Of a stretch of DNA of 64,000 nucleotides, positions 8,622 to 59,318 are shown piece by piece. The notes below the pieces were generated by a model, which did no database searches, was not told the DNA's origin, and saw only the letters and a list, made by a program, of their open reading frames with translations. The DNA is from Ylistrum balloti (Eukaryota), in contig NW_026781915.1 of assembly GCF_031769215.1 (NCBI RefSeq), positions 1,054,001 through 1,118,000 on the forward strand, written 5' to 3'. Made by a program: the position numbers and the translations under genes. Within the stretch, counting starts at the first letter, position 1; each line of letters starts with the position of its first letter.

Positions 8622-8737
8622 GTAGGTATAATGATATAGTAATCATACATAGAGGTAAAGGCATTGTCTTTCTTTTACAGCTTAATTCTGACTATTGTGA
8701 CTGACTGAGGATGTGTGTCTCCAGACACAGGGGTGGT

Positions 8738-11300
8738 ATGGGTTTGACACCTGACACAGCTGACTGGGGTATGGAGTTGATGCCTGACAAAGCTGACTGG
8801 GGTATGGAGTTGATGCCTGACACAGCTGACTTGGGTATGGAGTTGATACCTGACACAGCTGACTGGGGTATGGAGTTGATGCCTGACACAGCTGACTGGG
8901 GTATGGAGTTGATGCCTGACACAGCTGACAGGGGTATGGAGTTGATGCCTGACACAGCTGACTGGGGTATGGGTTTGACACCTGACACAGCTGACTGGGG
9001 TATGGAGTTGATGCCTGACAAAGCTGACTGGGGTATGGAGTTGATGCCTGACACAGCTGACTTGGGTATGGAGTTGATACCTGACACAGCTGACTGGGGT
9101 ATGGAGTTGATGCCTGACACAGCTGACTGGGGTATGGAGTTGATGCCTGACACAGCTGACTGGGGTATGGAGTTGATGCCTGACACAGCTGACTGGGGTA
9201 TGGGTTTGACACCTGACACAGCTGACTGGGGTATGGAGTTGATGCCTGACAAAGCTGACTGGGGTATGGAGTTGATGCCTGACACAGCTGACTTGGGTAT
9301 GGAGTTGAAACCTGACACAGCTGACTGGGGTATGGAGTCTATGCCTGACACAGCTGACTGGGGTATGGAGTTGATGCCTGACACAGCTGACTGGGGTATG
9401 GGTTTGACACCTGACACAGCTGACTGGGGTATGGAGTTGATGCCTGACAAAGCTGACTGGGGTATGGAGTTGATGCCTGACACAGCTGACTTGGGTATGG
9501 AGTTGATACCTGACACAGCTGACTGGGGTATTGAGTTGATGCCTGACACAGCTGACTGTGGTATGGAGTTGACGCCCGACACAGATGACTGGGGTATGGA
9601 GTTGATGCCTGACACAGCTGACTGGGGTATGGAGTTGATGCCTGACACAGCTGACTGGGGTATGGAGTTGATGCCTGACACAGCTTAATGTGGTATGGAG
9701 TTGATGCCTGACACAGCTGACTGGGGTATGGAGTTGATGCCTGACACAGCTGACTGGGGTATGGAGTTGATGCCTGACACAGCTGACTGGGGTATGGAGT
9801 TGATGCCTGACACAGCTGACTGGGGTATGGAGTTGATGCCTGACACAGCTGACTGGGGTATGGAGTTGATGCCTGACACAGCTGACTGGGGTATGGAGTT
9901 GATGCCTGACACAGCTGACTGGGGTATGGAGTTGATGCCTGACACAGCTGACTGGGGTATGGAGTTGATGCCTGACACAGCTGACTGGGGTATGGAGTTG
10001 ATGCCTGACACAGCTGACTGGGGTATGGAGTTGATGCCTGACACAGCTGACTGGGGTATGGAGTTGACGCCCGACACAGATGACTGGGGTATGGAGTTGA
10101 TGCCTGACACAGCTGACTGGGGTATGGAGTTGATGCCTGACACAGCTGACTGGGGTATGGAGTTGATGCCTAACACAGCTGATTGAGGTGAGGAGTTGAT
10201 GCCCGACACAGCTGACTGGGATATGGAGTTGATGCCTGACACAGCTGACTGGGGTATGGAGGTGATGCCTGACACAGCTGACTGGGGTATGGAGTTGATG
10301 CCTGACACAGCTGACTGGGGTATGGAGTTGATGCCTGACACAGCTGACTGGGGTATGGAGTTGATGCCTGACACAGCTGACTGGGGTATGGAGTTGATGC
10401 CTGACACAGCTGACTGGGGTATGGAGTTGATGCCTGACACAGCTGACTGGGGTATGGAGTTGATGCCTGACACAGCTGACTGGGGTATGGAGTTGATGCC
10501 TGACACAGCTGACTGGGGTATGGAGTTGATGCCTGACACAGCTGACTGGGGTATTGAGTTGTTGCCTGAAACAGCTGACTGGGGTATGGAGTTGATGCCT
10601 GACACAGCTGACTGGGGTATGGAGTTGATGCCTAACACAGCTGATTGAGGTGAGGAGTTGATGCCCGACACAGCTGACTGGGATATGGAGTTGATGCCTA
10701 ATACAGGTGACTGGATTATGGAGTTGATGCCTGACACAGATGACTGGGGTATGGAGTTGATGCCTGACACGGCTGACTGAGGTATGGAGTTGATGCCTGA
10801 CACGGCTGACTGAGGTATGGAGTTGATGTCTGATATAGCTGACTGGGTTATGGAGTTGATGCCTGACACAGCTATCTGGGGTGTGGAGTTGATACCTGAC
10901 ACAGCTGACTTGGGTATGGAGTTGATGCCTGACACAGCTGACTGGGGTGTGGAGTTGATGCCTGACACAGCTGACTGGGGTATGGAGGTGATGCCTGACA
11001 CAGCTGACTGGGGTATGGAGTTGATGCCTGACACAGCTGACTGGGGTATGGAGTTGATGCCTGACACAGCTGACTGGGGTATGGAGTTGATGCCTGACAC
11101 AGCTGACTGGGGTATGGAGTTGATGCCTGACACAGCTGACTGGGGTATGGAGTTGATGCCTGACACAGCTGACTGGGGTATGGAGTTGATGCCTGACACA
11201 GCTGACTGGGGTATGGAGTTGATGCCTGACACAGCTGACTGGGGTATGGAGTTGATGCCTGACACAGCTGACTGGGGTATGGAGTTGATGCCTGACATAG
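8738..11300 (+). repeat. 33-bp minisatellite (atggagttgatgcctgacacagctgactggggt), about 78 units, with higher-order structure
   Basis: Very homogeneous tandem array; explains the ORFs 8675..11323, 8692..9681, 8711..9688, 9685..11298 and others. Confidence 0.98.
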
Positions 11301-14059
11301 CTGGAGGAGAGCTTTAAATCCAAAATAGTGTTGTAATGTCTACTGCATCAGCTTAGCTAATGGTTTAATACTTGAGACAGCAGACATATAGGATATGTTG
11401 AGACCATTTAGAAGAAAACAAGTGTCATTAGCTGAAGACATTTGTTTCTTGAGTAAAAAAAACACTAGATTATTGTTCTCTGAAATAATATGGTGGGGTA
11501 ATGAAGCTATTCATGTCTACCGGTATGTGTAGGTCTTGATAATAATCAGAAAGATAAAGAGTTAGTGTTCATTTCAGTCCTATCTGTCTTAACACAGCTG
11601 TTCATGTAGATTATAATCCCATGGAGATTGTAATTAATTTTTTTAATAGAGTTTCTTACTCCCTTTGAGATTTTTGCATTTCAATGTTTATTTATTAACT
11701 TTCCAGGTTAACAGATAATTGAAGTATGTTTACCGAGTTTTGTTGAAATTAAACATTGTGATCTTCTCTCTAAACATTTGAGAAAATATCATGAACACAT
11801 GATAATAGCATCTTGTAACAAAGTTAGGGGGTTTATTGGAATCAGGTTGTATGAGATGGCCCTATAGACAACAGTACTATTTTTCTTTATTATTTTTATA
11901 ATTTTCTTAATTCAGAATAATCACTAGAAGACAAAACCTCCTTAATTTTTTTACCCAGTAAGTAAATACAACATTGTAATTTAAGCGGTGTATAAGTAAC
12001 ATATATTCTAAATTAACATTAAAACACATAAATTACAACACACAGGTGTTGTTAAAAAAAAGTACAACTTAGTTCAATCATTAATTGATATATAAATTAC
12101 ATTGATGATATAATCCTAAGCTGTTCCAAGCTAATACAATATAGCTTGTTAATTACTGGTCCAGAGGCTGAAGCCAACACCTGTAAACAAAAGAATTTCT
12201 ATCAGTCTCTAGTGTGCTACAAAGATAAGCTAACAACATTCCAGACTTCACAATCTTGTTTTTGGTTGGAGTTTAAATAGTTTTTTCACATCTTACATCT
12301 TTGTTATTGTCTAGCAGAAATAGTTGCAAATAACTCACAAACAACGCCTATTGACTGAATTGGAGAAGACTAGTACCACTGTAGGTCTGTGCACAGTCGT
12401 AAAGTGTACAATAAAAAAACGGTTTCAGGGCAGGAATGCTAGAGATGTGGACATTTGAAAGCTTCATTTACACTTCTGAAGTATTTGGAGGAGAATCCTG
12501 ATTTTGGAGTTGTAGGAACTAATGGTTATTAAATGAACACAAATGTCAATTTTTTTGTTGATATCGTAATCCATCAACAACAGGTGCATTATTTGTCTAG
12601 TACAAGCGTACTCTTTGTTTGTATGGAAATCCACTAAGTTTTGAAGTCAGGGGTTGAGTTTGGTTTTGAATTTTTTAACTACATTATTAAATATTAACTT
12701 CTTCAAACAATCTGTTTATGATACTTTAAGTAAATATTTGGTTGCAGGAAAGATAATTTCTCCATCCTTTTAAGTTATTATATCCAATTCTCGTTAATTT
12801 TGATGACAATGAGAAATGATATGATCCTGATAACTTATACAGTTGATAATGATGCTGAGGACTTTGACACTGTTCAGGATGATTTTACCAAACGGATGAC
12901 CTTGACAAACATTGATCATGCTGACTTGAAGGATGTATGAAACTCATATTTGACCAGAAATAGAACTGGACTGTAAACAAATTATATAACTTAATATCAT
13001 ATTGACTTCTGCATTTTGATAGACTTTTTACCATTACTTGTACCCCCCCCCCCACCCGCCCAATCCGCCACCCCTCCCCCTCTTTCCCAGCAGTGGAGCA
13101 CTTAATATGATGTTCTATGGAATTTTTCCTCTGGACTACATTAACCCCACCCCATTTGAGCTAAAATTTTGGTTGGAATGTTAAGGAAAGGCAGTCAAAA
13201 AAAGTGTTGTAAATTTTCAACATGGCAGCCAAGGAGGATATTTTGTAATATGATTGTGCAATCATGGTTTTCCTGTGTGACACCCATTTCAAACTTCTTC
13301 TCAAGTTTCTCCAATGGGATTAAGCTACAGCTCTGATATGATGTGTGTTGATGATAATGACAAAGTTGACATTTTTGACACCTGTTTAAGATGAGGAGTT
13401 TGATATAGTGATATTTGATGTTTTGTTACCATGGTGATCAACTACTTTGTTTATTTGTTTGACATTTTAATGTTGACGTTTTGTATTTTCTTAGTTATTG
13501 AAACTGAAAACAGATATGTGTATATTGTAAAAGGCTTTACTCTCTGAGGGTGGCCTTACCAGTAAGTGGCTCCAAGAATGTTCTAGGGTAGTGATGTATT
13601 ACTTAAGTCCTTGTCATAACTTGTGAATGTATTGTCATAGTAACCTTAGTACAGCAGTATGAAATAGGATTATATTGACTGTAAAACACACCGATCTACC
13701 ACCGATACACAGAAATTTTCGTGGTTTTTACATTGTTTAGTAAGTCAGGTTTAAATAGAAAAGTTGTTATCACAGCGAATTTGTTGATTTGTTTCAAGAT
13801 AACTACAGAAATGTAATGAATTTTACAAAAACATCATAAAAGTAAGCACCAGTAGAACTGCATTTTACCAACATGGTAGATAAGTTATAAACTGTGGTAT
13901 TTCACCCCCTCCCACCCATCCGCCTACCTTGTAAACTTATATTTGTTTACTGCCAACATTGGTTATACATAACTGGGAGAGATTTACCCAGGGGTGACTT
14001 AGGTTAAAGTTTTATTTTTGAAATACTTGAAATATATTTTTAATTCTCTTTTTTTTCAG

Positions 14060-14152
14060 ATCAAACTTGTAAACATTCGATCAGATGAAATTGTTGATGG
14101 CAACCCAAAACTGACGCTTGGTCTCATCTGGACCATCATCCTTCATTTCCAG
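14060..14152 (+). CDS. DST: Spectraplakin exon, end of CH1: [31 protein letters not shown]
   Basis: Acceptor ttttttttcag and donor GTAGGT at 14153; 93 nt, phase 0-0. Contains the near-invariant [30 protein letters not shown] motif (seen inside ORF 14018..14356). Confidence 0.98.
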
Positions 14153-24416: not shown

Positions 24417-24560
24417 ATGTTGTATTGTGAGGAATTCTTGTTGCCATTGTTCCATTTCTTTATTACCTTGGGATATTTCCTGATTCTAATGGAGAAGAAA
24501 CGATTCCCATTTAAACTTGGCTTTGGCCAGAAAAAAGTGAAATCACCTTTAAAGAAGCAG
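24417..24560 (+). CDS. Putative alternative first coding exon of the spectraplakin (48 aa, hydrophobic segment plus polybasic tail; a second in-frame ATG at 24489 gives 24 aa)
   Basis: ATG-initiated open frame ending in a strong CAG|GTAAGA donor in phase 0, compatible with the acceptor at 59152. Peptide MLYCEEFLLPLFHFFITLGYFLILMEKKRFPFKLGFGQKKVKSPLKKQ. Prediction only. Confidence 0.6.
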
Positions 24561-37658: not shown

Positions 37659-38027
37659 ATGATCAAGTGGACATGGAATTTATTAGAAAAAGCCAGAAGT
37701 ACTCCAGACATTTCCTCACACAATGGCCACTTTCTGGCTCCAGAACAACGGAGTTACTTCCCCTGGAGGCGTTTGTCCCCTTCTCCACTGCCGGTCCTCA
37801 GGGTAGTGCGCCCCTGTCTTAGATGTGGTTGTTACTATTCTTGTATGTGCGGCTTGTCTCCATGGCTAAAGACCAGACGGCCATCTTTACAGGAAGCTGT
37901 CCGCGGACTATTACTTCCTGACACCCTCACAGTGCGTCGGTGGTCTTTCCAAAACACCATCAGGAAGTTGTCTGAACCTAATGTCGTAAGAAGATATTCG
38001 CTTCCAACAAATATTGAAAATTATGTG
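37659..38027 (+). CDS. Putative alternative first coding exon (123 aa, Cys cluster, five R-R/K-x-S motifs)
   Basis: First 123 codons of non-repetitive ORF 37659..38150, locally more GC-rich. Phase-0 donor GTG|GTAAAA at 38028 (moderate strength), after which the sequence reverts to AT-rich intron-like DNA. Confidence 0.65.
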
Positions 38028-46345: not shown

Positions 46346-49300
46346 GAATCTATTTATAGCTTTACAATTAACTTATTGAATGACCTCTGTGTTTATTCAG
46401 GTATGTCAAAATATGATTTACATCATTATTGGTGTGTGTTGATTATTCAGTCACCTGTGTCAGGGTATGATAACGGGATTATAGATGTAGTTGTACAGTC
46501 AGGTGTGTCCAGGTATAATAATCTATTTATAGATTTATGTGTTCATTCAGGCATGTCATTTATTTTCAGCCAAGCGTGCCAAAATCTGATGAATCAATTT
46601 TTAAATGGTAGGATTTACCTATTGATAGATATTGAGGGTTGACCAATGAATGTCAACCCAGAAATCCTATTATGTATAACACAATATTTCTCACTGGACT
46701 GGACAAAACCAATTTTCTATCCAGTTACCTGGTTATCTATGCCTGTAAATTGGCAACCATTATCGGTGTATAGAGGTATTTGTCTACTGTTTGTGTATTA
46801 CCTCCGGTGATTGGATAAGGTGTGATAAGGGAAGTGAGTGTTCAATGGCTACTGTTGGGAGTTGATCAAGCTATCAGCTCACACTCTCCTTCACATTACT
46901 GCTAATTATATCCCATTTACCTGCCCATTCCCAGTGCTAGCAGCTTTACACAAAACAATTCTAAAAATCCCCTTACATTGCATCTGTGGAATAAGAAGCA
47001 TCTTTGAGTGATTGAAATCTATGATATTTACAATTAAAGTCAGTTGTACATTCATTCACTGACTTCCTTCTCCTTATATATTTTGAATGAAGACAGCATG
47101 CTGTAGGATGACTATGCTGATACAACCCATTCAACATACAATTATATGTATGTTGTTGGCATATACACTGATTATGTGTGTGTCTACATGTAGGTATTAT
47201 CTTCCACAAGTCTGGGAGCCAGGATTTCTGTTTGTTTGAAGTGGGTGTGCTTGAATCCATGGAGATACATTCCCTGTTACTTTCTCAAAGTGAATCGTTA
47301 TTGTTAGGAAAGTGCTAGAAGAAAACCACATGACAAGGAACAAAGTGCTAATGATTTTTACCTGATCAGGTTTAGGTGTAAGCTGAGGAATTCATTAGAA
47401 ATGAATCGCTGAGAAAATGGAATAAATTACAAGGTCATCATGCAAATAAAATGTGTGACTGAATTTTATAACTTCTGTGATCGTGATGTCCTCATATGTT
47501 ATACGGTAGTTGAAACCGGTGAAGGCAGTTCATCTCAAACTATGGGCCAGGAAATATTTAAAAATTTGTAAGGTGCCCTTGTTGATTTCATTGGAGTTAA
47601 ATGACTGTAAATTAAGAGGTAGGCTATATGACACAGCCACTGCAGCTAAGATTACAGTTTATCATTGTGTATCGTGTAGTGATTTGTACTCCAGTGTTTA
47701 AGAAGAGTTCATTATCCGTGCAGTTGAGCTCGTGCCAGAGTGATTGCCTAAGAACTATGAGTGATGGGAAGATATATCTACACTAACAATGTCAGCTGAG
47801 ACGAGGATGCAGTTAAAACCGACATTTTTTGATGATATGTCTTGTGCCATTAATTCTGATCTAATCCAAGTAGATTTGATTTCAGTTGGAGATTCCTTTC
47901 TACAAATTTGTGATTATGACGTGGTGGATGTCGGAGGACACGCATATAGATATAGTGTAAGGTCATCTTCAGTTAAAAATGGATTTGACACCTAGTTTAA
48001 ATATATCACAGATTTGAGAAAATCAATTCATTGGATTAAGTGGAGGAACCTGTTTCTGATACTAAAGCAAGACTTGTTTCAGATTGAGGATATTGAGATG
48101 TTAAATTTTAATGTGTATCATTATTAGGTGAAGTTCTTGCATGGAGGAGAAAAAAGTAATGGCTTAACTTTATATACATTTGCCTTAGAAGATAAATTGC
48201 TTGATTAAGTGATTTTGGACAGCCAAAGCCTGAGGGTACATTATAAGAGTGACCAGAGGTCATTGGCTAGACAGATACATGTATGTCTAAACTGGTCATT
48301 GGAGTAGGAAGTGACCAGAGACAGGTGTGACATAGGAGTCGTCAAATTAATTTATTAGTCGGCTAAATCTGATTAGCAGTATATTATGAACACATGGGAG
48401 GTGGTCATCTGAGACAGTTAACACTCAACGATTCATTCGGACACTCCAGTCAGATTTGGTCTGCCTGTCAATCAGTTACACCTGGTTGGGTTAGGGCTAC
48501 AGGCTTGACAAGAATTCTAGACCAGGCAGGCAACAACGCTCAGGTGACACAGGGGATAGGAGGTGGAGACGACCCAATTGTACAGGTCCAAGTTCTCCGT
48601 GCATCAGGAATTTTAAGTCTGGGGATGATAGCCCTGATATTGGGATAACACTGATCCCTTTATCAATAATCAATTTTTACCTGGCCAGGTAGATACCTGG
48701 TATTAATTACCAGTAAAGAAATATTAGTGAGAAAGACAAAGTGTTGGCCATGGTCTGGATATAAACGGGGATACATTTTATAACAAACCTGTTTTATAAA
48801 CATCATCAACAGATCATTGTTCCATGAAAAAAGTCCTGTGACATATGAGTATGATGCCTGTGTATATTATATATGCGGGATGATAAAGGTAAATCCCCAT
48901 GTCATCAGGAGTGTGGGCGTCGACCAGAACCCATCGGCTGAAATAATTATGGGGTCAAGATTAAGTTAAGGATCCCTATCACCCAGGTATTCAGTTGGGA
49001 CCACACCACAATCTAGACCTGCTGGACACACCTGGAGTGAGGCTCAGATCTGTCCATACTGGAGTATTCCAGACACCACAAGGATAGTGTGCTGTGTAAC
49101 ACACTCAAGTTTGTTTCAAACCTACCGCGGTGCCATCCTACTCGAGGCATTGTCTTGTGATCAGAAACTCTTGGCATACAGGGTATATAGTTGGTATTGT
49201 GAAGGGGTGCCCGGTAATGAGTGGGATTACTCCGTGTCTATAAGCATTTAAATACCTTGACCTGTTTTAGGAGCTAATTGTTGATGTGTATGTGGCCTGA

Positions 49301-49647
49301 ACCGCAGCTAGGAGTGTCCACTTGTACTCCAGTGTTGACATTTTTTTCGTGCAATTATTTTTTAAAAGTGCAAAACTACAATTTTACCCTGACAGGATCA
49401 TTAAATCTAAATATTTTATTATGTTTAACAACATTAAAGCGATGTCATATGGACGTCCATTGTGTACGCAGGACATAGAAGTGTAGACAACAACCCCAGT
49501 GTGAATGAATGAAGAGTTTTCGCTCGAGTGGAATATGTTACCGTCCCCTGTATGGAGTACACATGTTCGGGCCACATCATACACCTGTCCTCTCATGAAG
49601 CCAAAATGGATTTAATTCGTTTACATAGCTTGGAGTAATTTTTCGCC

Positions 49648-49749
49648 ATGTTTGGATGTTTCGGAAAGAAGAAAAAAAAGTTAAAGGGGAAAGCCCCACT
49701 TGACAGTAGAAGGGATGTTTGTAGTAATGAAGAGCAACCGGATCAACAG
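49648..49749 (+). CDS. Putative alternative first coding exon (34 aa): MFGCFGKKKKKLKGKAPLDSRRDVCSNEEQPDQQ
   Basis: ATG in good context (cgccATG), open frame to a strong CAG|GTATGA phase-0 donor, and a motif-like peptide. Too short for the ORF track. Confidence 0.65.
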
Positions 49750-50700
49750 GTATGATATTGCTAGGTGGGTTGGTACTACAGGTGGAATATTGTATAATGG
49801 GTTGGTGCTACAGCTATGATATTGTGTGATGGGTTGGTGCTACAGGTATTATATTGTGTGATGGGTCGGTGCTACAGGTATGATATTGTGTGATGGGTCG
49901 GTGCTACAGGTATGATATTGTATAATGGGTCGGTGCTACAGCTATGATATTATGTGATGGGTTGGTGCTACAACTATGATATTGTGTGATGGGTTGGTGC
50001 TACAGCTATGATATTGTGTGATGGGTTGGTGCTACAGCTATGATATTGTGTGATAAGTCGGTGCTACAGCTTTGATATTGTGTGATGGGTTGGTGCTACA
50101 GCTATGATATTGTGTGATGGGTTGGTGCTACAGGTATGATATTGTGTGATGGGTTGGTGCTAAAGGTATGATATTGTGTGATGGGTCGGTGCTACAGCTA
50201 TGATATTACAGGTATGATATTGTGTGATAAGTCGGTGCTACAGCATTGATATTGTGTGATAAGTCGGTGCTACAGCTTTGATATTGTGTGATGGGTTGGT
50301 GCTACAGCTATGATATTGTGTGATGGGTTGGTGCTACAGGTATGATATTGTGTGATGGGTTGGTGCTAAAGGTATGATATTGTGTGATGGGTCGGTGCTA
50401 CAGGTATGATATTACAGGTATGATATTGTGTGATAAGTCGGTGCTACAGCTTTGATATTGTGTGATTGTGTGATGGGTTGGTGCTACAGGTATGATATTG
50501 TATGATGGGTTGGCGCTACAGGTATGATATTGTATGATGGGTCGGTGCTACAGCTATGATATTGTGTGATGGGTTGGTGCTACAGCTATGATATTGTGTG
50601 ATGGGTCAGTGCTACAGGTATGATATTGTATGATGGGTCGGTGCTGCAGGTATGATATTGTATAATGGGTTGGTGCTACAGCTATGATATTGTGATATGA
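49747..50700. repeat. 32-bp minisatellite (caggtatgatattgtgtgatgggttggtgcta)
   Basis: About 30 units, starting exactly at the donor of candidate exon 49648-49749. Confidence 0.96.
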
Positions 50701-56640: not shown

Positions 56641-59151
56641 GGGGTTAGCTGTGTCATATACCTTCAACCTCCCTCAAAGGTCCTTTTCTGTGCTTTTATC
56701 CTATCCCGACCTCTATCCCACTTGTGTTGCTTTATACTCTCAATGTGTTTTTCATTGAAAGTTTTTGTTTGTGTTGGTTAGCAACAATCTTCATTTCTCA
56801 TGTATTTACATTTCCTTACAACTTACATAGGCATGTTTCTAAACAACTTGATTAGAAAGGCTTGTTTCTGAGGAGCTTTGTTTGTAAAAGACATGTTCTT
56901 GAAAACTCGTTTTGTAATAAATTTGTTGTTAAAGAGCTCATTTGTGATGGACATGAATATGAATTTTTTATTTGCAACAGACATGTTTTTTAAGAAAAAT
57001 CCCTCTAAGCCAGACAGTTTGTTTTAGAATATATAGATATAGTTAGTGAGTTTGTCAGACTCTTTGTATGCTTGATATGTCCTGGCCTTGTAGGATAAAT
57101 CTTATGTCACTGATGTGGTGTCCAGAGGGTGTGATGTATATATCATCTGTTGCCAACTAACAAGACAGAGCTTAACATGATAATGCTTCTGGGGTTTAAT
57201 TTGAAAATGAAAATGACAATGACAATTTCTTTGCCTGTTGAGGACAGTGTAATATGTTGGTGACCATTTCTTTACTTGTTCAGGAAGGTGTTGGTGACCC
57301 TGGTCAAATTTCCTCTCCTAGCACAGAAATGTTAGTTTTATCTATTTACTCAATAGGGCAGATACACACAGAACTGTGGTCATTCCTAACAGGGATGAGT
57401 GGTCAGTTATTTCTGATACACATATTTAACTTGTTTTCCTAAATATCTTATAAAAATCATTTTAGAATCTTAAAATACTTGAAATGACTCTGTTCTATAA
57501 AACATCAATTTGGTCACTGAGTATTGAGTGAGAGTTTCAACAAATTTTATTTAGTTATTGAGATTTTGAAGTACAGGGTTATCTGTAAAACAGTCTTTAT
57601 GAAGAAGTCAGTGTTGAAACTCTTCTGGAAGAAAATAAATTTACACTGTCTAGTCGACAAACTTAAACAGCAATAAACTTTTTCATGGAGTCTTAAATTC
57701 CAAACTGTTGAAGGTCTTAGATCAGACATAAATAATCATGAGATTCAGGTGTATTTTGTACTTGAATTTACAATTTCTGTCTATATTGAAATAAGTCTGA
57801 CCTTTCCCCTCTCACCATGCTAAATGACAGGTTTTAGGCAAGCTTCCCTTTAATCATACCTCTGATGATATGAAGTTTTCAGCTCGTATTTATGGTAGTT
57901 GTGTGATGCTTTTTGGTCTGTCATGGTGAGTATTTACGACAGTTATGTGATGTGGAGGCCTGTTGGGGTGGGAGATATGGTCTATATATCTTTCAACATA
58001 TCTCTCTAGTTCAATTTGACAAGAATTAGTCTCTGTGGGAGATTGGCAAATAGGAGAGGGTTATTTCTTTCACTTTCTCTGATAAAAGGGAGACATCTTT
58101 ATCCCAGAGTTTGAGACACTGGCTCCAAAGTGGCACTTTTCACTAAAGTGTACAAACAAACCTCTAAAGCCAATTACTGGCGTCTTGGTCAAATGTTGTG
58201 TACACATTGTATGTCTAATCGGCTATATATTGTCTATGGGATATGAGGTTCAAATCATGTGGGATCGCAAAATTATCAGCGATAATATATAGCAGTATTC
58301 ATGGTTAATGTCTGTCCTTTTTCATTTCAATTGTTTTGGTTGGTTTTATGGGGAATCAAACATTCTCACCTGGTCCAGGAAAATAGACAGAACTTTTACA
58401 AACAAGGAAGATGATACATATTGTACGTGTAATTCAAAACGTTCTTGACTTGCATTTAACAAATAACACTAACAAAAGGCACAGCTTGAAAACTCCCAAC
58501 GTTTTGACGTTAAGTGGAAAATTAAAGAAAAATTCATCGTTTTTTTTAGAAGAAATAGAACACCCTGGCACATTTAATGGCTGTAAAATTCTATTATGTA
58601 TGATAAATTTCTGATTATTTAAACAATTCTTTTTGACATTGATTTATCAGCTCAGACTTTGTGATGCAATTTTGTGGTTATATGATTTGATTAAGTATTA
58701 TTCATGCTGGTGTTACTTTGTATCAGAATGTCTTGATTTATTTTACAAAGACTGCATGTTTTTTTCTTATGAAAATGCTAACTCTTTTGCATTTGATTGA
58801 AATTTTTAAGTAGTCATCAGTGTTATTGATGTCTGGAGTAACTTGTGATTTAGAAAATGGTTTTGATATTCCTGACTACAATTAAATGGAAAGTTTTGTT
58901 TATATAGATATCATGCCTGGAGTGATCCCTTTGGTTTTAATCGTTTCCGAGCAATATTTTATGGGTCAAGTTCATTGGGTCAAATGTCACACCAGGACTC
59001 CATTTTCTGATGTTGTTTGGTGGGGGATGTATCTTAATGAGCACTTGTTCACTTGACTTTATTTCATTGTGTTGTCTAATAATTGTATTGCATGAAAGTC
59101 ATTTAACTATGAATGTCAGCCATGATTGTAATGTGTCCCCCTGTGTTGTAG

Positions 59152-59318
59152 GTGTCAGACGTTGTCGTCCCTGGACAACCTGAAGACATCACAGCCAAAG
59201 AAGCCTTGTTGCTATGGAGTCGACGAACAGTGGAAGGCTACCCTGGGGTCAAGATCAACAACTTCAGCAAAAGTTGGAGGGACGGACGTGCATTCCTATC
59301 CATTATACACAGACACAG
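59152..59318 (+). CDS. DST: Spectraplakin exon, linker plus first half of CH2: VSDVVVPGQPEDITAKEALLLWSRRTVEGYPGVKINNFSKSWRDGRAFLSIIHRH(R)
   Basis: Acceptor ccctgtgttgtag and donor GTCAGT at 59319; 167 nt, phase 0-2. Shows the CH2 motifs TAKExLLLW and NFxxSWRDGxAF; continues exon 14060-14152 in frame. Confidence 0.96.

What the first reader, a model, noticed from the sequence alone, without database searches (positions are those of the whole stretch)
49648..49749. MFGCFGKKKKK leader: N-terminal Cys plus polylysine membrane-targeting signature
Seen: cgccATG, then MFGCFGKKKKKLKGK..., with a consensus CAG|GTATGA donor in phase 0. Known: a Cys near the N-terminus next to hydrophobic and polybasic residues is a classic S-palmitoylation/plasma-membrane signal (as in GAP-43-like leaders). 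Inference: a plasma-membrane-targeted CH1-less spectraplakin, functionally parallel to vertebrate type-3 isoforms but with an unrelated sequence.
Basis: partly seen in the sequence, partly recalled or inferred. Interest (0 to 1): 0.8.

Follow-up and report, generated by a model that had tools for sequence, protein, structure and literature searches.

The report
Conserved Cys-polylysine start exon, mollusc spectraplakin
A 34-codon reading frame inside the long intron of a mollusc giant cytoskeletal-linker (spectraplakin) gene is a real alternative start exon kept by selection. Its invariant Met-Phe, cysteine and lysine-run opening probably ties a version of the protein lacking half its actin-binding domain to a membrane, but neither the spliced RNA nor the lipid anchor has been seen.

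Summary
ATG 49648 opens MFGCFGKKKKKLKGKAPLDSRRDVCSNEEQPDQQ, which ends on CAG|GTATGA in phase 0. An in-frame TAA lies 3 codons upstream and a TGA lies right after the donor. The CH2 exon at 59152 accepts phase 0.

Within this window the ORF plus donor is no better than chance: 2 such ORFs on the sense strand and 2 on the control strand.

Comparison across species settles the exon:
- **Close relative (L023).** It keeps the exon at 83% identity against 55-65% in the flanks. There are 8 synonymous and 6 replacement codon changes (pN/pS 0.18, p 2e-5), one in-frame 9-nt indel, and the donor is CAG|GTGAGT.
- **Two distant animals (L019, L021).** They carry MFCGCGRRKKKKK... and MFCGCGPRKKKSK... start ORFs. 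Each ends on a phase-0 CAG|GT, 3.6 and 1.2 kb upstream of its own CH2 exon.
- **Invariant positions.** M1, F2, G6, five lysines, the final Q, and a Cys at positions 3-5.

The gene is a spectraplakin: it has CH domains, a giant plectin-repeat exon and spectrin repeats.

My reading is a conserved alternative first exon that gives a CH2-only isoform with a GAP-43-like S-acylation plus polybasic membrane signal. This parallels vertebrate dystonin-a3, but there is no Gly2, so it is not a myristoylation signal.

The 49749→59152 junction, the transcription start and the lipidation are not shown. The RNA-library contigs laid on the region were unspliced.

The scan had already noted this stretch and two sibling leaders in the same intron.

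The parts
49648..49749 (+). Coding part of the alternative first exon: 34 codons, MFGCFGKKKKKLKGKAPLDSRRDVCSNEEQPDQQ
   Evidence: sequence; 83% identity to L023 against 55-65% in the flanks, pN/pS 0.18; alignment with L023, L019 and L021; single copy in its own genome.
49636..49638 (+). In-frame TAA three codons before the ATG, with no AG between. It makes 49648 an obligate start codon.
49750..49755 (+). Phase-0 splice donor GTATGA (CAG|GTATGA). The read-through frame stops at once (GTA TGA).
   Evidence: The donor sits at the same codon boundary in L023 (CAG|GTGAGT), L019 (CAG|GTAACT) and L021 (CAG|GTACAG).
49746..50694 (+). 32-bp minisatellite whose first unit contains the donor. It holds 12 exact copies of CAGGTATGA, so 11 are decoy donors downstream.
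   Evidence: In L023 only about one unit (TGCTACAGGTATGATAT) lies some 25 nt into the intron.
59152..59318 (+). First CH2 exon, phase-0 acceptor ttgtag|GTG. This is the presumed splice target of the leader.
   Evidence: sequence. Pfam CH, 2.6e-9; orthologous exons in other animals.
14060..14152 (+). Last CH1 exon (...[28 protein letters not shown]|gt), which ends in phase 0. The leader isoform skips it. The start coordinate is approximate.
   Evidence: ORF translation; matches the end of the CH profile, positions 82-108 of 109.
49606..49638 (+). Possible 10-codon upstream ORF (MDLIRLHSLE) ending at the TAA. A 10-codon uORF sits at the same place in L023, but its peptide is not conserved.
   Evidence: The relative's substitutions change its peptide but keep the ATG and the TAA.

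Best explanation
Bases 49648-49749 are the coding part of a conserved alternative first exon of a mollusc spectraplakin gene (orthologue of MACF1, dystonin and Shot). I infer that transcription starts at an internal promoter in the 45-kb CH1-CH2 intron. I also infer that the exon splices from CAG|GT at 49749/49750 to the phase-0 acceptor of the first CH2 exon at 59152.

The product is a 'type-3 / C-type' isoform with only the CH2 half of the actin-binding domain, preceded by a 34-residue leader. The first 15 residues carry the function. They hold an unprocessed hydrophobic Met-Phe, a Cys at positions 3-5 between Gly/Phe, and a run of 7 lysines in 9 residues.

The most likely mechanism has three steps:
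1. The polybasic run and the hydrophobic tip bring the nascent N-terminus onto acidic membranes.
2. A DHHC S-acyltransferase then palmitoylates the Cys.
3. Acyl chain plus electrostatics hold this end of the giant linker at the plasma membrane or cell cortex, as in GAP-43.

The C-terminal microtubule-binding end stays free. The variable acidic/polar tail (residues 20-34) acts as a spacer.

Shown here: the exon, its start, its coding constraint, its conserved donor and its position. Inferred: the junction, the promoter, the acylation and which membrane is targeted.
For: 1. **Coding constraint.** Window against the close relative L023 gives 8 synonymous and 6 replacement codon changes, pS 0.56, pN 0.098, ratio 0.18, Fisher p 2e-5. 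Codons 1-19 show no amino-acid change despite 5 synonymously changed codons. The only indel is 9 nt and in frame. The exon is 83% identical, against 58-65% upstream and 55% in the intron.
2. **A second relative.** Contigs laid are identical over 49636-49697, whereas 49519-49635 carries 19 substitutions and 10 gap positions. Beyond that point they read P-LDGRKDV against P-LDSRRDV in frame, with synonymous Leu, Asp, Arg and Val changes.
3. **Deep positional conservation.** L019 has MFCGCGRRKKKKKAKKYSTPVQ|GTAACT 3.6 kb upstream of its CH2 exon. L021 has MFCGCGPRKKKSKLK...NAPQ|GTACAG (61 codons) 1.2 kb upstream of its CH2 exon.
4. **Only the homologues pass the scan.** Among ORFs that are Cys-early and K/R-rich, only these homologues end on a phase-0 donor.
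5. **Invariant positions.** M1, F2, G6, K9-11, K13, K15 and the final Q, with Cys at positions 3-5 in all four.
6. **Start exon.** In-frame stops lie 3 codons (window) and 6 codons (L021) upstream, and there is a purine at -3 in all four.
7. **Phase match.** The CH1 exon ends in phase 0 and the CH2 exon starts in phase 0 in the window, L019 and L021.
8. **Gene identity.** CH domains; plectin repeats at 7.9e-129 in a 3766-codon open frame; spectrin repeats downstream.
9. **Precedent.** Dystonin-a3/b3 has a putative myristoylation motif before a single CH domain and goes to the plasma membrane (PMC3279385, PMC6975176). Dystonin leaders hold potential myristoylation or palmitoylation sites (bioRxiv 10.1101/122010).
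10. **GAP-43.** Its palmitoylated Cys3/Cys4 next to basic residues is recalled from my own knowledge, not tested here.
Against: - No spliced read or protein fragment joins the leader to CH2.
  - Contigs from one run on record as RNA and three runs guessed to be RNA cover the exon. They are collinear with the genome for more than 1.1 kb upstream and run 66-163 nt past 49697, and those letters were not shown.
  - The protein searches found only unspliced ORF calls.
- The window's donor is only moderate (4.05 bits) and is followed by 11 identical decoys.
- The number and position of cysteines differ: one at position 4 here, two at positions 3 and 5 in L019 and L021. The homology of MFGCFG with MFCGCG rests on 6 residues plus context.
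- KKKKKLKGK also fits a classical nuclear-localisation signal.
- No palmitoylation predictor or experiment was available.
- The organisms behind L019, L021 and L023 are unknown.
Confidence: 0.55

Rival explanations
1. The exon is real and makes a CH2-only isoform, but the leader is not lipidated. The lysine run would act on its own. It could be a classical nuclear-localisation signal, or a purely electrostatic binder of acidic phospholipids, microtubules or actin. The Cys would then be structural, redox-sensitive or incidental.
For: K9-K11, K13 and K15 are invariant, whereas the Cys shifts position and number between lineages. KKKKKLKGK fits the K-K/R-x-K/R nuclear-signal consensus (own knowledge). 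The literature also discusses nuclear localisation directed by other dystonin N-termini (bioRxiv 10.1101/122010 lists an NLS among spectraplakin motifs).
Against: A Cys within residues 3-5 is present in every species, always between Gly/Phe and directly before the basic run. Met-Phe is invariant as well. That is more constraint than a bare nuclear signal or charge patch needs, and it is the layout of known N-terminal S-acylation signals.
Confidence: 0.22
2. The conserved ORF is translated but is not joined to CH2. It would be a free micropeptide, or the first exon of a separate gene nested in the intron, or a regulatory ORF of a non-coding intronic transcript.
For: No junction was seen. RNA-library contigs are unspliced across it. 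Only the first 19 residues are tightly conserved.
Against: The conserved coding region ends exactly at a CAG|GT in phase 0 in all four species, while the read-through frames differ (1, 12, 9 and 17 codons). The ORF keeps its place directly upstream of the CH2 exon, on the same strand, although the distance varies (9.4, 3.6 and 1.2 kb). Leader length varies from 22 to 61 codons, as expected for a linker and not for a fixed micropeptide.
Confidence: 0.1
3. It is a chance ORF next to a minisatellite whose unit happens to contain a donor-like CAGGTATGA. There is no exon.
For: Within the window, ORF-plus-donor candidates are as frequent on the antisense control strand. The donor motif is part of a repeat.
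Against: pN/pS is 0.18 with p 2e-5, the indel is in frame, and the exon is an island of identity. The donor is kept in L023 as GTGAGT without the array. Homologous start ORFs exist in two distant species that have no minisatellite.
Confidence: 0.03

Closest known systems
Vertebrate dystonin/BPAG1 isoform 3 (dystonin-a3/b3) and MACF1 type-3 N-termini
   Same: Each is an alternative first exon with its own promoter inside the intron between the CH1 and CH2 exons. Each gives a short unique leader followed by CH2 only. The dystonin-a3 leader carries a putative lipidation motif and directs the protein to the plasma membrane (PMC3279385, PMC6975176, PMC3352950; bioRxiv 10.1101/122010).
   Different: The vertebrate motif is described as N-myristoylation, which needs Gly2. 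Here residue 2 is Phe in all four species, so the anchor would be S-acyl Cys plus a lysine run. Sequence relatedness to the vertebrate leader could not be tested. No localisation or expression data exist for the mollusc exon.
Drosophila Shot C-type isoform (CH2 only)
   Same: It is an invertebrate spectraplakin with four promoters and alternative lead sequences. The C-type lacks CH1 (bioRxiv 10.1101/122010).
   Different: That review states that no specific functions had been reported for the Shot lead sequences. It mentions no lipidation-type motif for Shot leaders. No sequence comparison was done here.
GAP-43-type N-terminal S-acylation plus basic-cluster membrane signal
   Same: One or two Cys lie within the first five residues, next to hydrophobic residues and directly followed by a basic cluster. 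There is no Gly2 and no transmembrane segment (own knowledge of GAP-43; layout seen).
   Different: The resemblance is functional only, with no homology claimed. Here the basic run is much longer (7 K in 9 residues), closer to a K-Ras4B-type polybasic region. Acylation is untested.
Sibling leaders in the same intron (24417-24560; 37659-38027)
   Same: Both are ATG-initiated ORFs on the same strand in the CH1-CH2 intron, noted by this scan. The 123-codon one was judged a conserved alternative start exon by another follow-up (s1-232034). ORF 24417-24560 also ends on a phase-0 donor (7.2 bits).
   Different: Their sequences and predicted signals differ: one is a hydrophobic signal-anchor-like leader, the other a basic Cys/RRxS-rich leader. 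I did not test them.

Membership tests
Spectraplakin gene (MACF1 / dystonin / Shot orthologue) | N-terminal calponin-type actin-binding domain made of CH1 and CH2 | tested here: met
   59152-59316 matches Pfam CH at 2.6e-9 (profile positions 3-44). 14069-14158 matches the end of a CH domain (profile positions 82-108; E 0.0011, below the cut-off because the piece is only 30 aa).
Spectraplakin gene (MACF1 / dystonin / Shot orthologue) | Plakin (plectin) repeat region and spectrin-repeat rod on the same gene | tested here: met
   open frames of 3766 and 1889 codons lie 25-42 kb downstream on the same strand. Plectin repeat 7.9e-129; Spectrin repeat 8.4e-15 and 8.6e-14.
Spectraplakin gene (MACF1 / dystonin / Shot orthologue) | C-terminal EF-hands and GAR (Gas2-related) microtubule-binding domain | not tested
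   The 3' end of the gene lies beyond the 160 kb fetched and was not sought.
Type-3 / C-type (CH2-only) spectraplakin N-terminal isoform | Own start-codon exon located between the CH1 and CH2 exons | tested here: met
   the leader at 49648 lies between the CH1 exon (ends 14152) and the CH2 exon (starts 59152), with an in-frame stop 3 codons upstream. L019 and L021 have the same layout.
Type-3 / C-type (CH2-only) spectraplakin N-terminal isoform | Transcript in which the leader exon is spliced directly to the first CH2 exon | tested here: inconclusive
Phases match (0/0) in three species. However, the laid contigs were unspliced and their letters beyond 49727 were not shown. No spliced protein fragment was found.
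N-terminal S-acylation + polybasic membrane signal (GAP-43-like) | Cys within the first ~5 residues in a hydrophobic context, directly followed by a basic cluster, and conserved | tested here: met
   Cys at positions 3-5 in all four species. M1, F2, G6, K9-11, K13 and K15 are invariant.
N-terminal S-acylation + polybasic membrane signal (GAP-43-like) | Thioester-linked fatty acid on the Cys, and Cys-dependent membrane localisation | not testable with these tools
   Needs acyl-exchange or click chemistry and imaging.
N-myristoylation signal (as described for dystonin-a3) | Gly at position 2 after removal of the initiator Met | tested here: not met
   residue 2 is Phe in the window, L023, L019 and L021.

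The most novel reading that the evidence does not exclude
A lipid-anchored, CH2-only spectraplakin isoform may be an ancestral bilaterian feature. On that reading the mollusc MF(C)GC(F)G-polybasic leader and the vertebrate dystonin/MACF1 type-3 lipidation leader descend from one ancient exon in the CH1-CH2 intron. The anchor chemistry would have switched between S-acyl plus polybasic and myristoyl during evolution, rather than arising twice.
Probability: 0.15. Interest if true: 0.6.

Novelty: new variant of a known kind. Interest (0 to 1): 0.4.

Why it matters
Spectraplakins link actin, microtubules and membranes, and their many N-terminal isoforms are thought to decide where the giant protein works.

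Only for vertebrate dystonin has a lipidation-type leader on a CH2-only isoform been described. For the invertebrate model Shot, the review I consulted says no function has been assigned to the leaders.

This exon is a leader with a different lipid/charge signal, conserved across distant mollusc-like lineages at the same gene position. It suggests that membrane tethering of the CH1-less isoform is a recurrent, possibly ancient, design.

It also gives a short, easily testable targeting peptide (C4S and K-to-A mutants) in a group with almost no cell-biological data on this gene.

It is an incremental result, not a new kind of system. Automated genome annotations of related molluscs may already include it; I could not check that.

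Tried and rejected
1. **Transposon or repeat arm next to the minisatellite: rejected.** The 311-nt stretch and the peptide are single copy in the 648-Mb genome.
2. **Transcript evidence: inconclusive.** Both run searches and the single read-laying run were used.
   - The runs hold 3 words of the exon.
   - The contigs are from a relative and are collinear with the genome (islands at 48561-691, 48948-999, 49118-142, 49360-411 and 49519-697).
   - They extend 66-163 nt beyond 49697, but only 30 of those letters are shown.
   - This is neither support for splicing nor evidence against it.
3. **Word search with the 34-aa leader: refused.** The minimum query is 40 aa.
4. **CH2-exon word search.** It returned only 8 genomic ORF calls and no spliced fragments, but it gave the loci that proved useful.
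5. **Searches with the L021 ORF and with P0010.** Each found only itself.
6. **Representative-library search.**
   - P0010 is the useful hit.
   - P0011 is an 846-aa repeat protein whose APLSSSSDVTSSEQQPD units give a chance match inflated by six repeats. I rejected it.
7. **Degenerate DNA scans of JGI metagenome contigs** for MFGCFGKKKKK and MFCGCGxRKKK: both blank.
8. **L018, L020 and L022.** These have 3.9 kb or less upstream of their CH2 exons and show no leader. This is uninformative, since the leader lies 9.4 kb upstream in the window.
9. **Jefferson et al. 2006, the primary paper on the dystonin leaders,** is not held. The vertebrate leader sequence could therefore not be compared.
10. 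**Pfam on the leader:** no family.
11. **Reaching annotated full-length isoforms through the giant exon:** considered and dropped. Those proteins would fall outside the length window of the word search.

Full report
**What is there**

Bases 49648-49749 on the + strand read ATG TTT GGA TGT TTC GGA AAG AAG AAA AAA AAG ..., which translates to MFGCFGKKKKKLKGKAPLDSRRDVCSNEEQPDQQ. They are preceded by ttttcgcc and followed by GTATGA.

An in-frame TAA lies three codons upstream with no AG between it and the ATG. The frame closes one codon after the donor (GTA TGA). So if this ORF codes for anything longer than 35 residues, it must start here and splice at 49749.

At 59151/59152 there is ttgtag|GTG TCA GAC ..., which opens [56 protein letters not shown]. 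Pfam calls this a CH domain at 2.6e-9, profile positions 3-44. Both sides are phase 0.

**Gene context**

- The last CH1 exon (...[28 protein letters not shown]|gt) ends at 14152, also in phase 0.
- I fetched 160 kb downstream from the same contig.
- There are open frames of 3766 and 1889 codons 25-42 kb further on. They are full of plectin repeats (7.9e-129).
- Spectrin-repeat exons follow.
- The gene is a spectraplakin.
- The candidate exon sits in its 45-kb CH1-CH2 intron. This is where vertebrate 'type-3' and Drosophila 'C-type' promoters lie (bioRxiv 10.1101/122010).
- The window is G000:C58:1054001-1118000 of a 648.5-Mb genome.
- One run that holds part of the exon is labelled 'mollusc metagenome'.

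**Is it more than chance?**

Within the window alone it is not. On a vertebrate-type donor matrix the site scores 4.05 bits, against 5.6 for the CH2 exon's donor.

ATG ORFs of at least 30 codons that end on a donor of at least 4 bits in phase 0 occur twice on the sense strand of the intron, and this is one of them. They also occur twice on the antisense control.

The donor is the first unit of a 32-bp minisatellite at 49746-50694. That array repeats CAGGTATGA twelve times. An obvious rival was that the ORF is the flank of a repeat element. It is not: both the 311-nt stretch and the peptide are single copy in the genome.

**Conservation in close relatives**

Reading every protein of the 1.84-billion-protein representative library with the 34-residue peptide gave one true hit, P0010 (E 4.9e-9). 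It reads MFGCFGKKKKKLKGKAPLDAKKDGQSLCSIEEHPDQQ followed by 12 residues of intron read-through. It lies on a 3.4-kb Logan contig, L023.

Aligned to the window:
- The exon is 83% identical, whereas the 250 nt upstream are 58% identical and the intron 55%.
- Of 34 aligned codons, 20 are identical, 8 changed synonymously and 6 changed the residue (three of these are R to K or V to L).
- pS is 0.56, pN is 0.098, the ratio is 0.18, and Fisher p is 2e-5.
- The first 19 codons carry five synonymously changed codons and no replacement.
- The only indel is 9 nt, in frame.
- The donor is kept at the same codon boundary, as a stronger CAG|GTGAGT. This shows it does not depend on the minisatellite.

A second relative was seen through contigs laid. 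It is identical over 49636-49697, while the 117 nt before that carry 19 substitutions and 10 gap positions. Its next 30 letters read P-LDGRKDVPT against P-LDSRRDVCS in frame, again with synonymous Leu, Asp, Arg and Val codons.

**Conservation in distant animals**

The CH2 exon found eight genomic ORF calls from other animals. For two of them enough upstream DNA was available.

- **L019** (CH2 exon 71% identical). The ORF aacaATG TTC TGC GGT TGT GGC AGG AGG AAG AAG AAA AAG AAG ... CAG|GTAACT encodes MFCGCGRRKKKKKAKKYSTPVQ. It lies 3.6 kb upstream of ttgcag|GTGTCGGAC.
- **L021** (CH2 exon 73% identical). MFCGCGPRKKKSKLK...NAPQ, 61 codons, ends on CAG|GTACAG in phase 0. It lies 1.2 kb upstream of tttgcag|ATTTCAGAT.

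I then scanned systematically for ATG ORFs with a Cys in residues 2-8 and at least five K/R in the first 20. This returned several candidates per locus, but only these homologues end on a phase-0 donor.

The four-way alignment has M1, F2, G6, K9-K11, K13, K15 and the final Q invariant. Every sequence has a Cys at positions 3-5. Leader length varies (22, 34, 37 and 61 codons), and the tails are polar and unalignable.

All four have a purine at -3. The window and L021 have in-frame stops 3 and 6 codons upstream.

I conclude, with about 0.9 confidence, that this is a real protein-coding start exon that has kept its position next to the CH2 exon.

**What is not shown**

I could not obtain a spliced read. 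The two run searches found runs of other organisms that each hold three words of the exon.

When laid, their contigs were collinear with the genome for more than 1.1 kb upstream. One run is on record as RNA-seq and three are guessed to be RNA. The contigs continue 66-163 nt past 49697, beyond the donor position, but the tool prints only 30 of those letters.

They may be pre-mRNA of the long isoforms, DNA carry-over or a long unspliced leader. They neither support nor contradict splicing.

No protein fragment joining leader and CH2 was found. The length window of the word search and the clustering of the representative library make that blank uninformative.

The junction therefore rests on four points: conserved phase-0 donors, a conserved phase-0 acceptor, conserved adjacency despite variable distance, and the absence of any other way for the conserved ORF to continue.

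**Mechanism**

The conserved part is exactly what an N-terminal membrane signal needs:
- a hydrophobic, unprocessed Met-Phe (from general knowledge, methionine aminopeptidase does not remove Met before Phe);
- one or two Cys flanked by Gly/Phe;
- a dense basic run directly after.

From general knowledge this is the layout of GAP-43-type signals, where palmitoylated Cys next to basic residues gives stable plasma-membrane binding. The lysine density also recalls the K-Ras4B polybasic region.

It cannot be an N-myristoylation signal, because residue 2 is Phe in all four species.

For vertebrate dystonin the literature describes isoform a3/b3 as having a putative myristoylation motif before a single CH domain, which aids localisation to the plasma membrane (PMC3279385, PMC6975176, PMC3352950). 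[quoted passage not shown] The same review reports no function for the leaders of Drosophila Shot (bioRxiv 10.1101/122010).

The mollusc exon is thus a functional parallel with different predicted anchor chemistry.

Rivals, with my odds:
- The lysine run acts as a nuclear-localisation or purely electrostatic signal without acylation (0.22).
- The ORF is not joined to CH2 (0.10).
- Chance (0.03).

**Novelty and score**

An alternative lipidation-type leader on a CH2-only spectraplakin isoform is a known kind (dystonin-a3). This is a new variant, for three reasons. It is in molluscs, it uses a Cys-plus-polylysine signal instead of Gly2, and it is conserved across distant lineages.

I could not test two things: whether automated annotations of related molluscs already list the isoform, and whether the leader is homologous to the vertebrate one.

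Interest is 0.4. The exon is solid and testable, and it bears on whether membrane tethering of CH1-less isoforms is ancestral. It is incremental for specialists.

The scan had already noted this stretch (s1-232043) and two sibling leaders in the same intron (s1-232042, s1-232034).

Noticed in passing
window 49746-50694: A 32-bp minisatellite (29.5 copies) starts at the last 4 bases of the exon and repeats the donor 9-mer CAGGTATGA 12 times. The relative L023 has a GTGAGT donor and only about one unit (TGCTACAGGTATGATAT) some 25 nt into the intron. The array therefore seems to have expanded in this lineage and overwritten a stronger donor. The 11 decoy donors would all yield a TGA-terminated message.
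   Followed up: partly
window 49606-49638; L023 2485-2517: A 10-codon upstream ORF ends at a TAA 9 nt (window) or 8 nt (L023) before the main ATG. Its ATG, length and stop are kept in the window, in L023 and in the relative, but its peptide is not. It may be a regulatory uORF, if the 5'UTR reaches that far. It is not seen in L019 or L021.
   Followed up: partly
window 48561-49697: Contigs from a run on record as RNA-seq and from three runs guessed to be RNA cover this intronic stretch unspliced, for up to 2.5 kb. They show conserved islands at 48561-48691, 48948-48999, 49118-49142, 49360-49411 and 49519-49697. These could be promoter or enhancer blocks of the internal promoter, or pre-mRNA.
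   Followed up: no
window 24417-24560: MLYCEEFLLPLFHFFITLGYFLILMEKKRFPFKLGFGQKKVKSPLKKQ ends on the best phase-0 donor in the intron (7.2 bits). It is a hydrophobic, signal-anchor-like candidate leader that the scan had already noted (s1-232042). I did not test it for conservation.
   Followed up: no
window 8675-11323: A 2.6-kb tandem array is open in several frames on both strands, for example an 882-codon frame of HQLHTPVSCVR units (33 bp). G+C is 0.46-0.48 against about 0.35 around it. It lies upstream of the CH1 exon.
   Followed up: no
G000:C58:1142817-1154114 and 1154226-1159892 (L004-L006): Two huge stop-free frames of 3766 and 1889 codons lie on the gene's strand. The first is packed with plectin repeats. 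Together they form a plakin-repeat region of more than 5600 residues, larger than the roughly 2000-residue PRD insert listed for BPAG1b in PMC3352950.
   Followed up: partly
L019 12559-15543: In the distant relative, a 994-residue ORF with Exo_endo_phos and RVT_1 domains (a LINE-type retrotransposon) sits in the intron 2.3 kb downstream of the CH2 exon.
   Followed up: no
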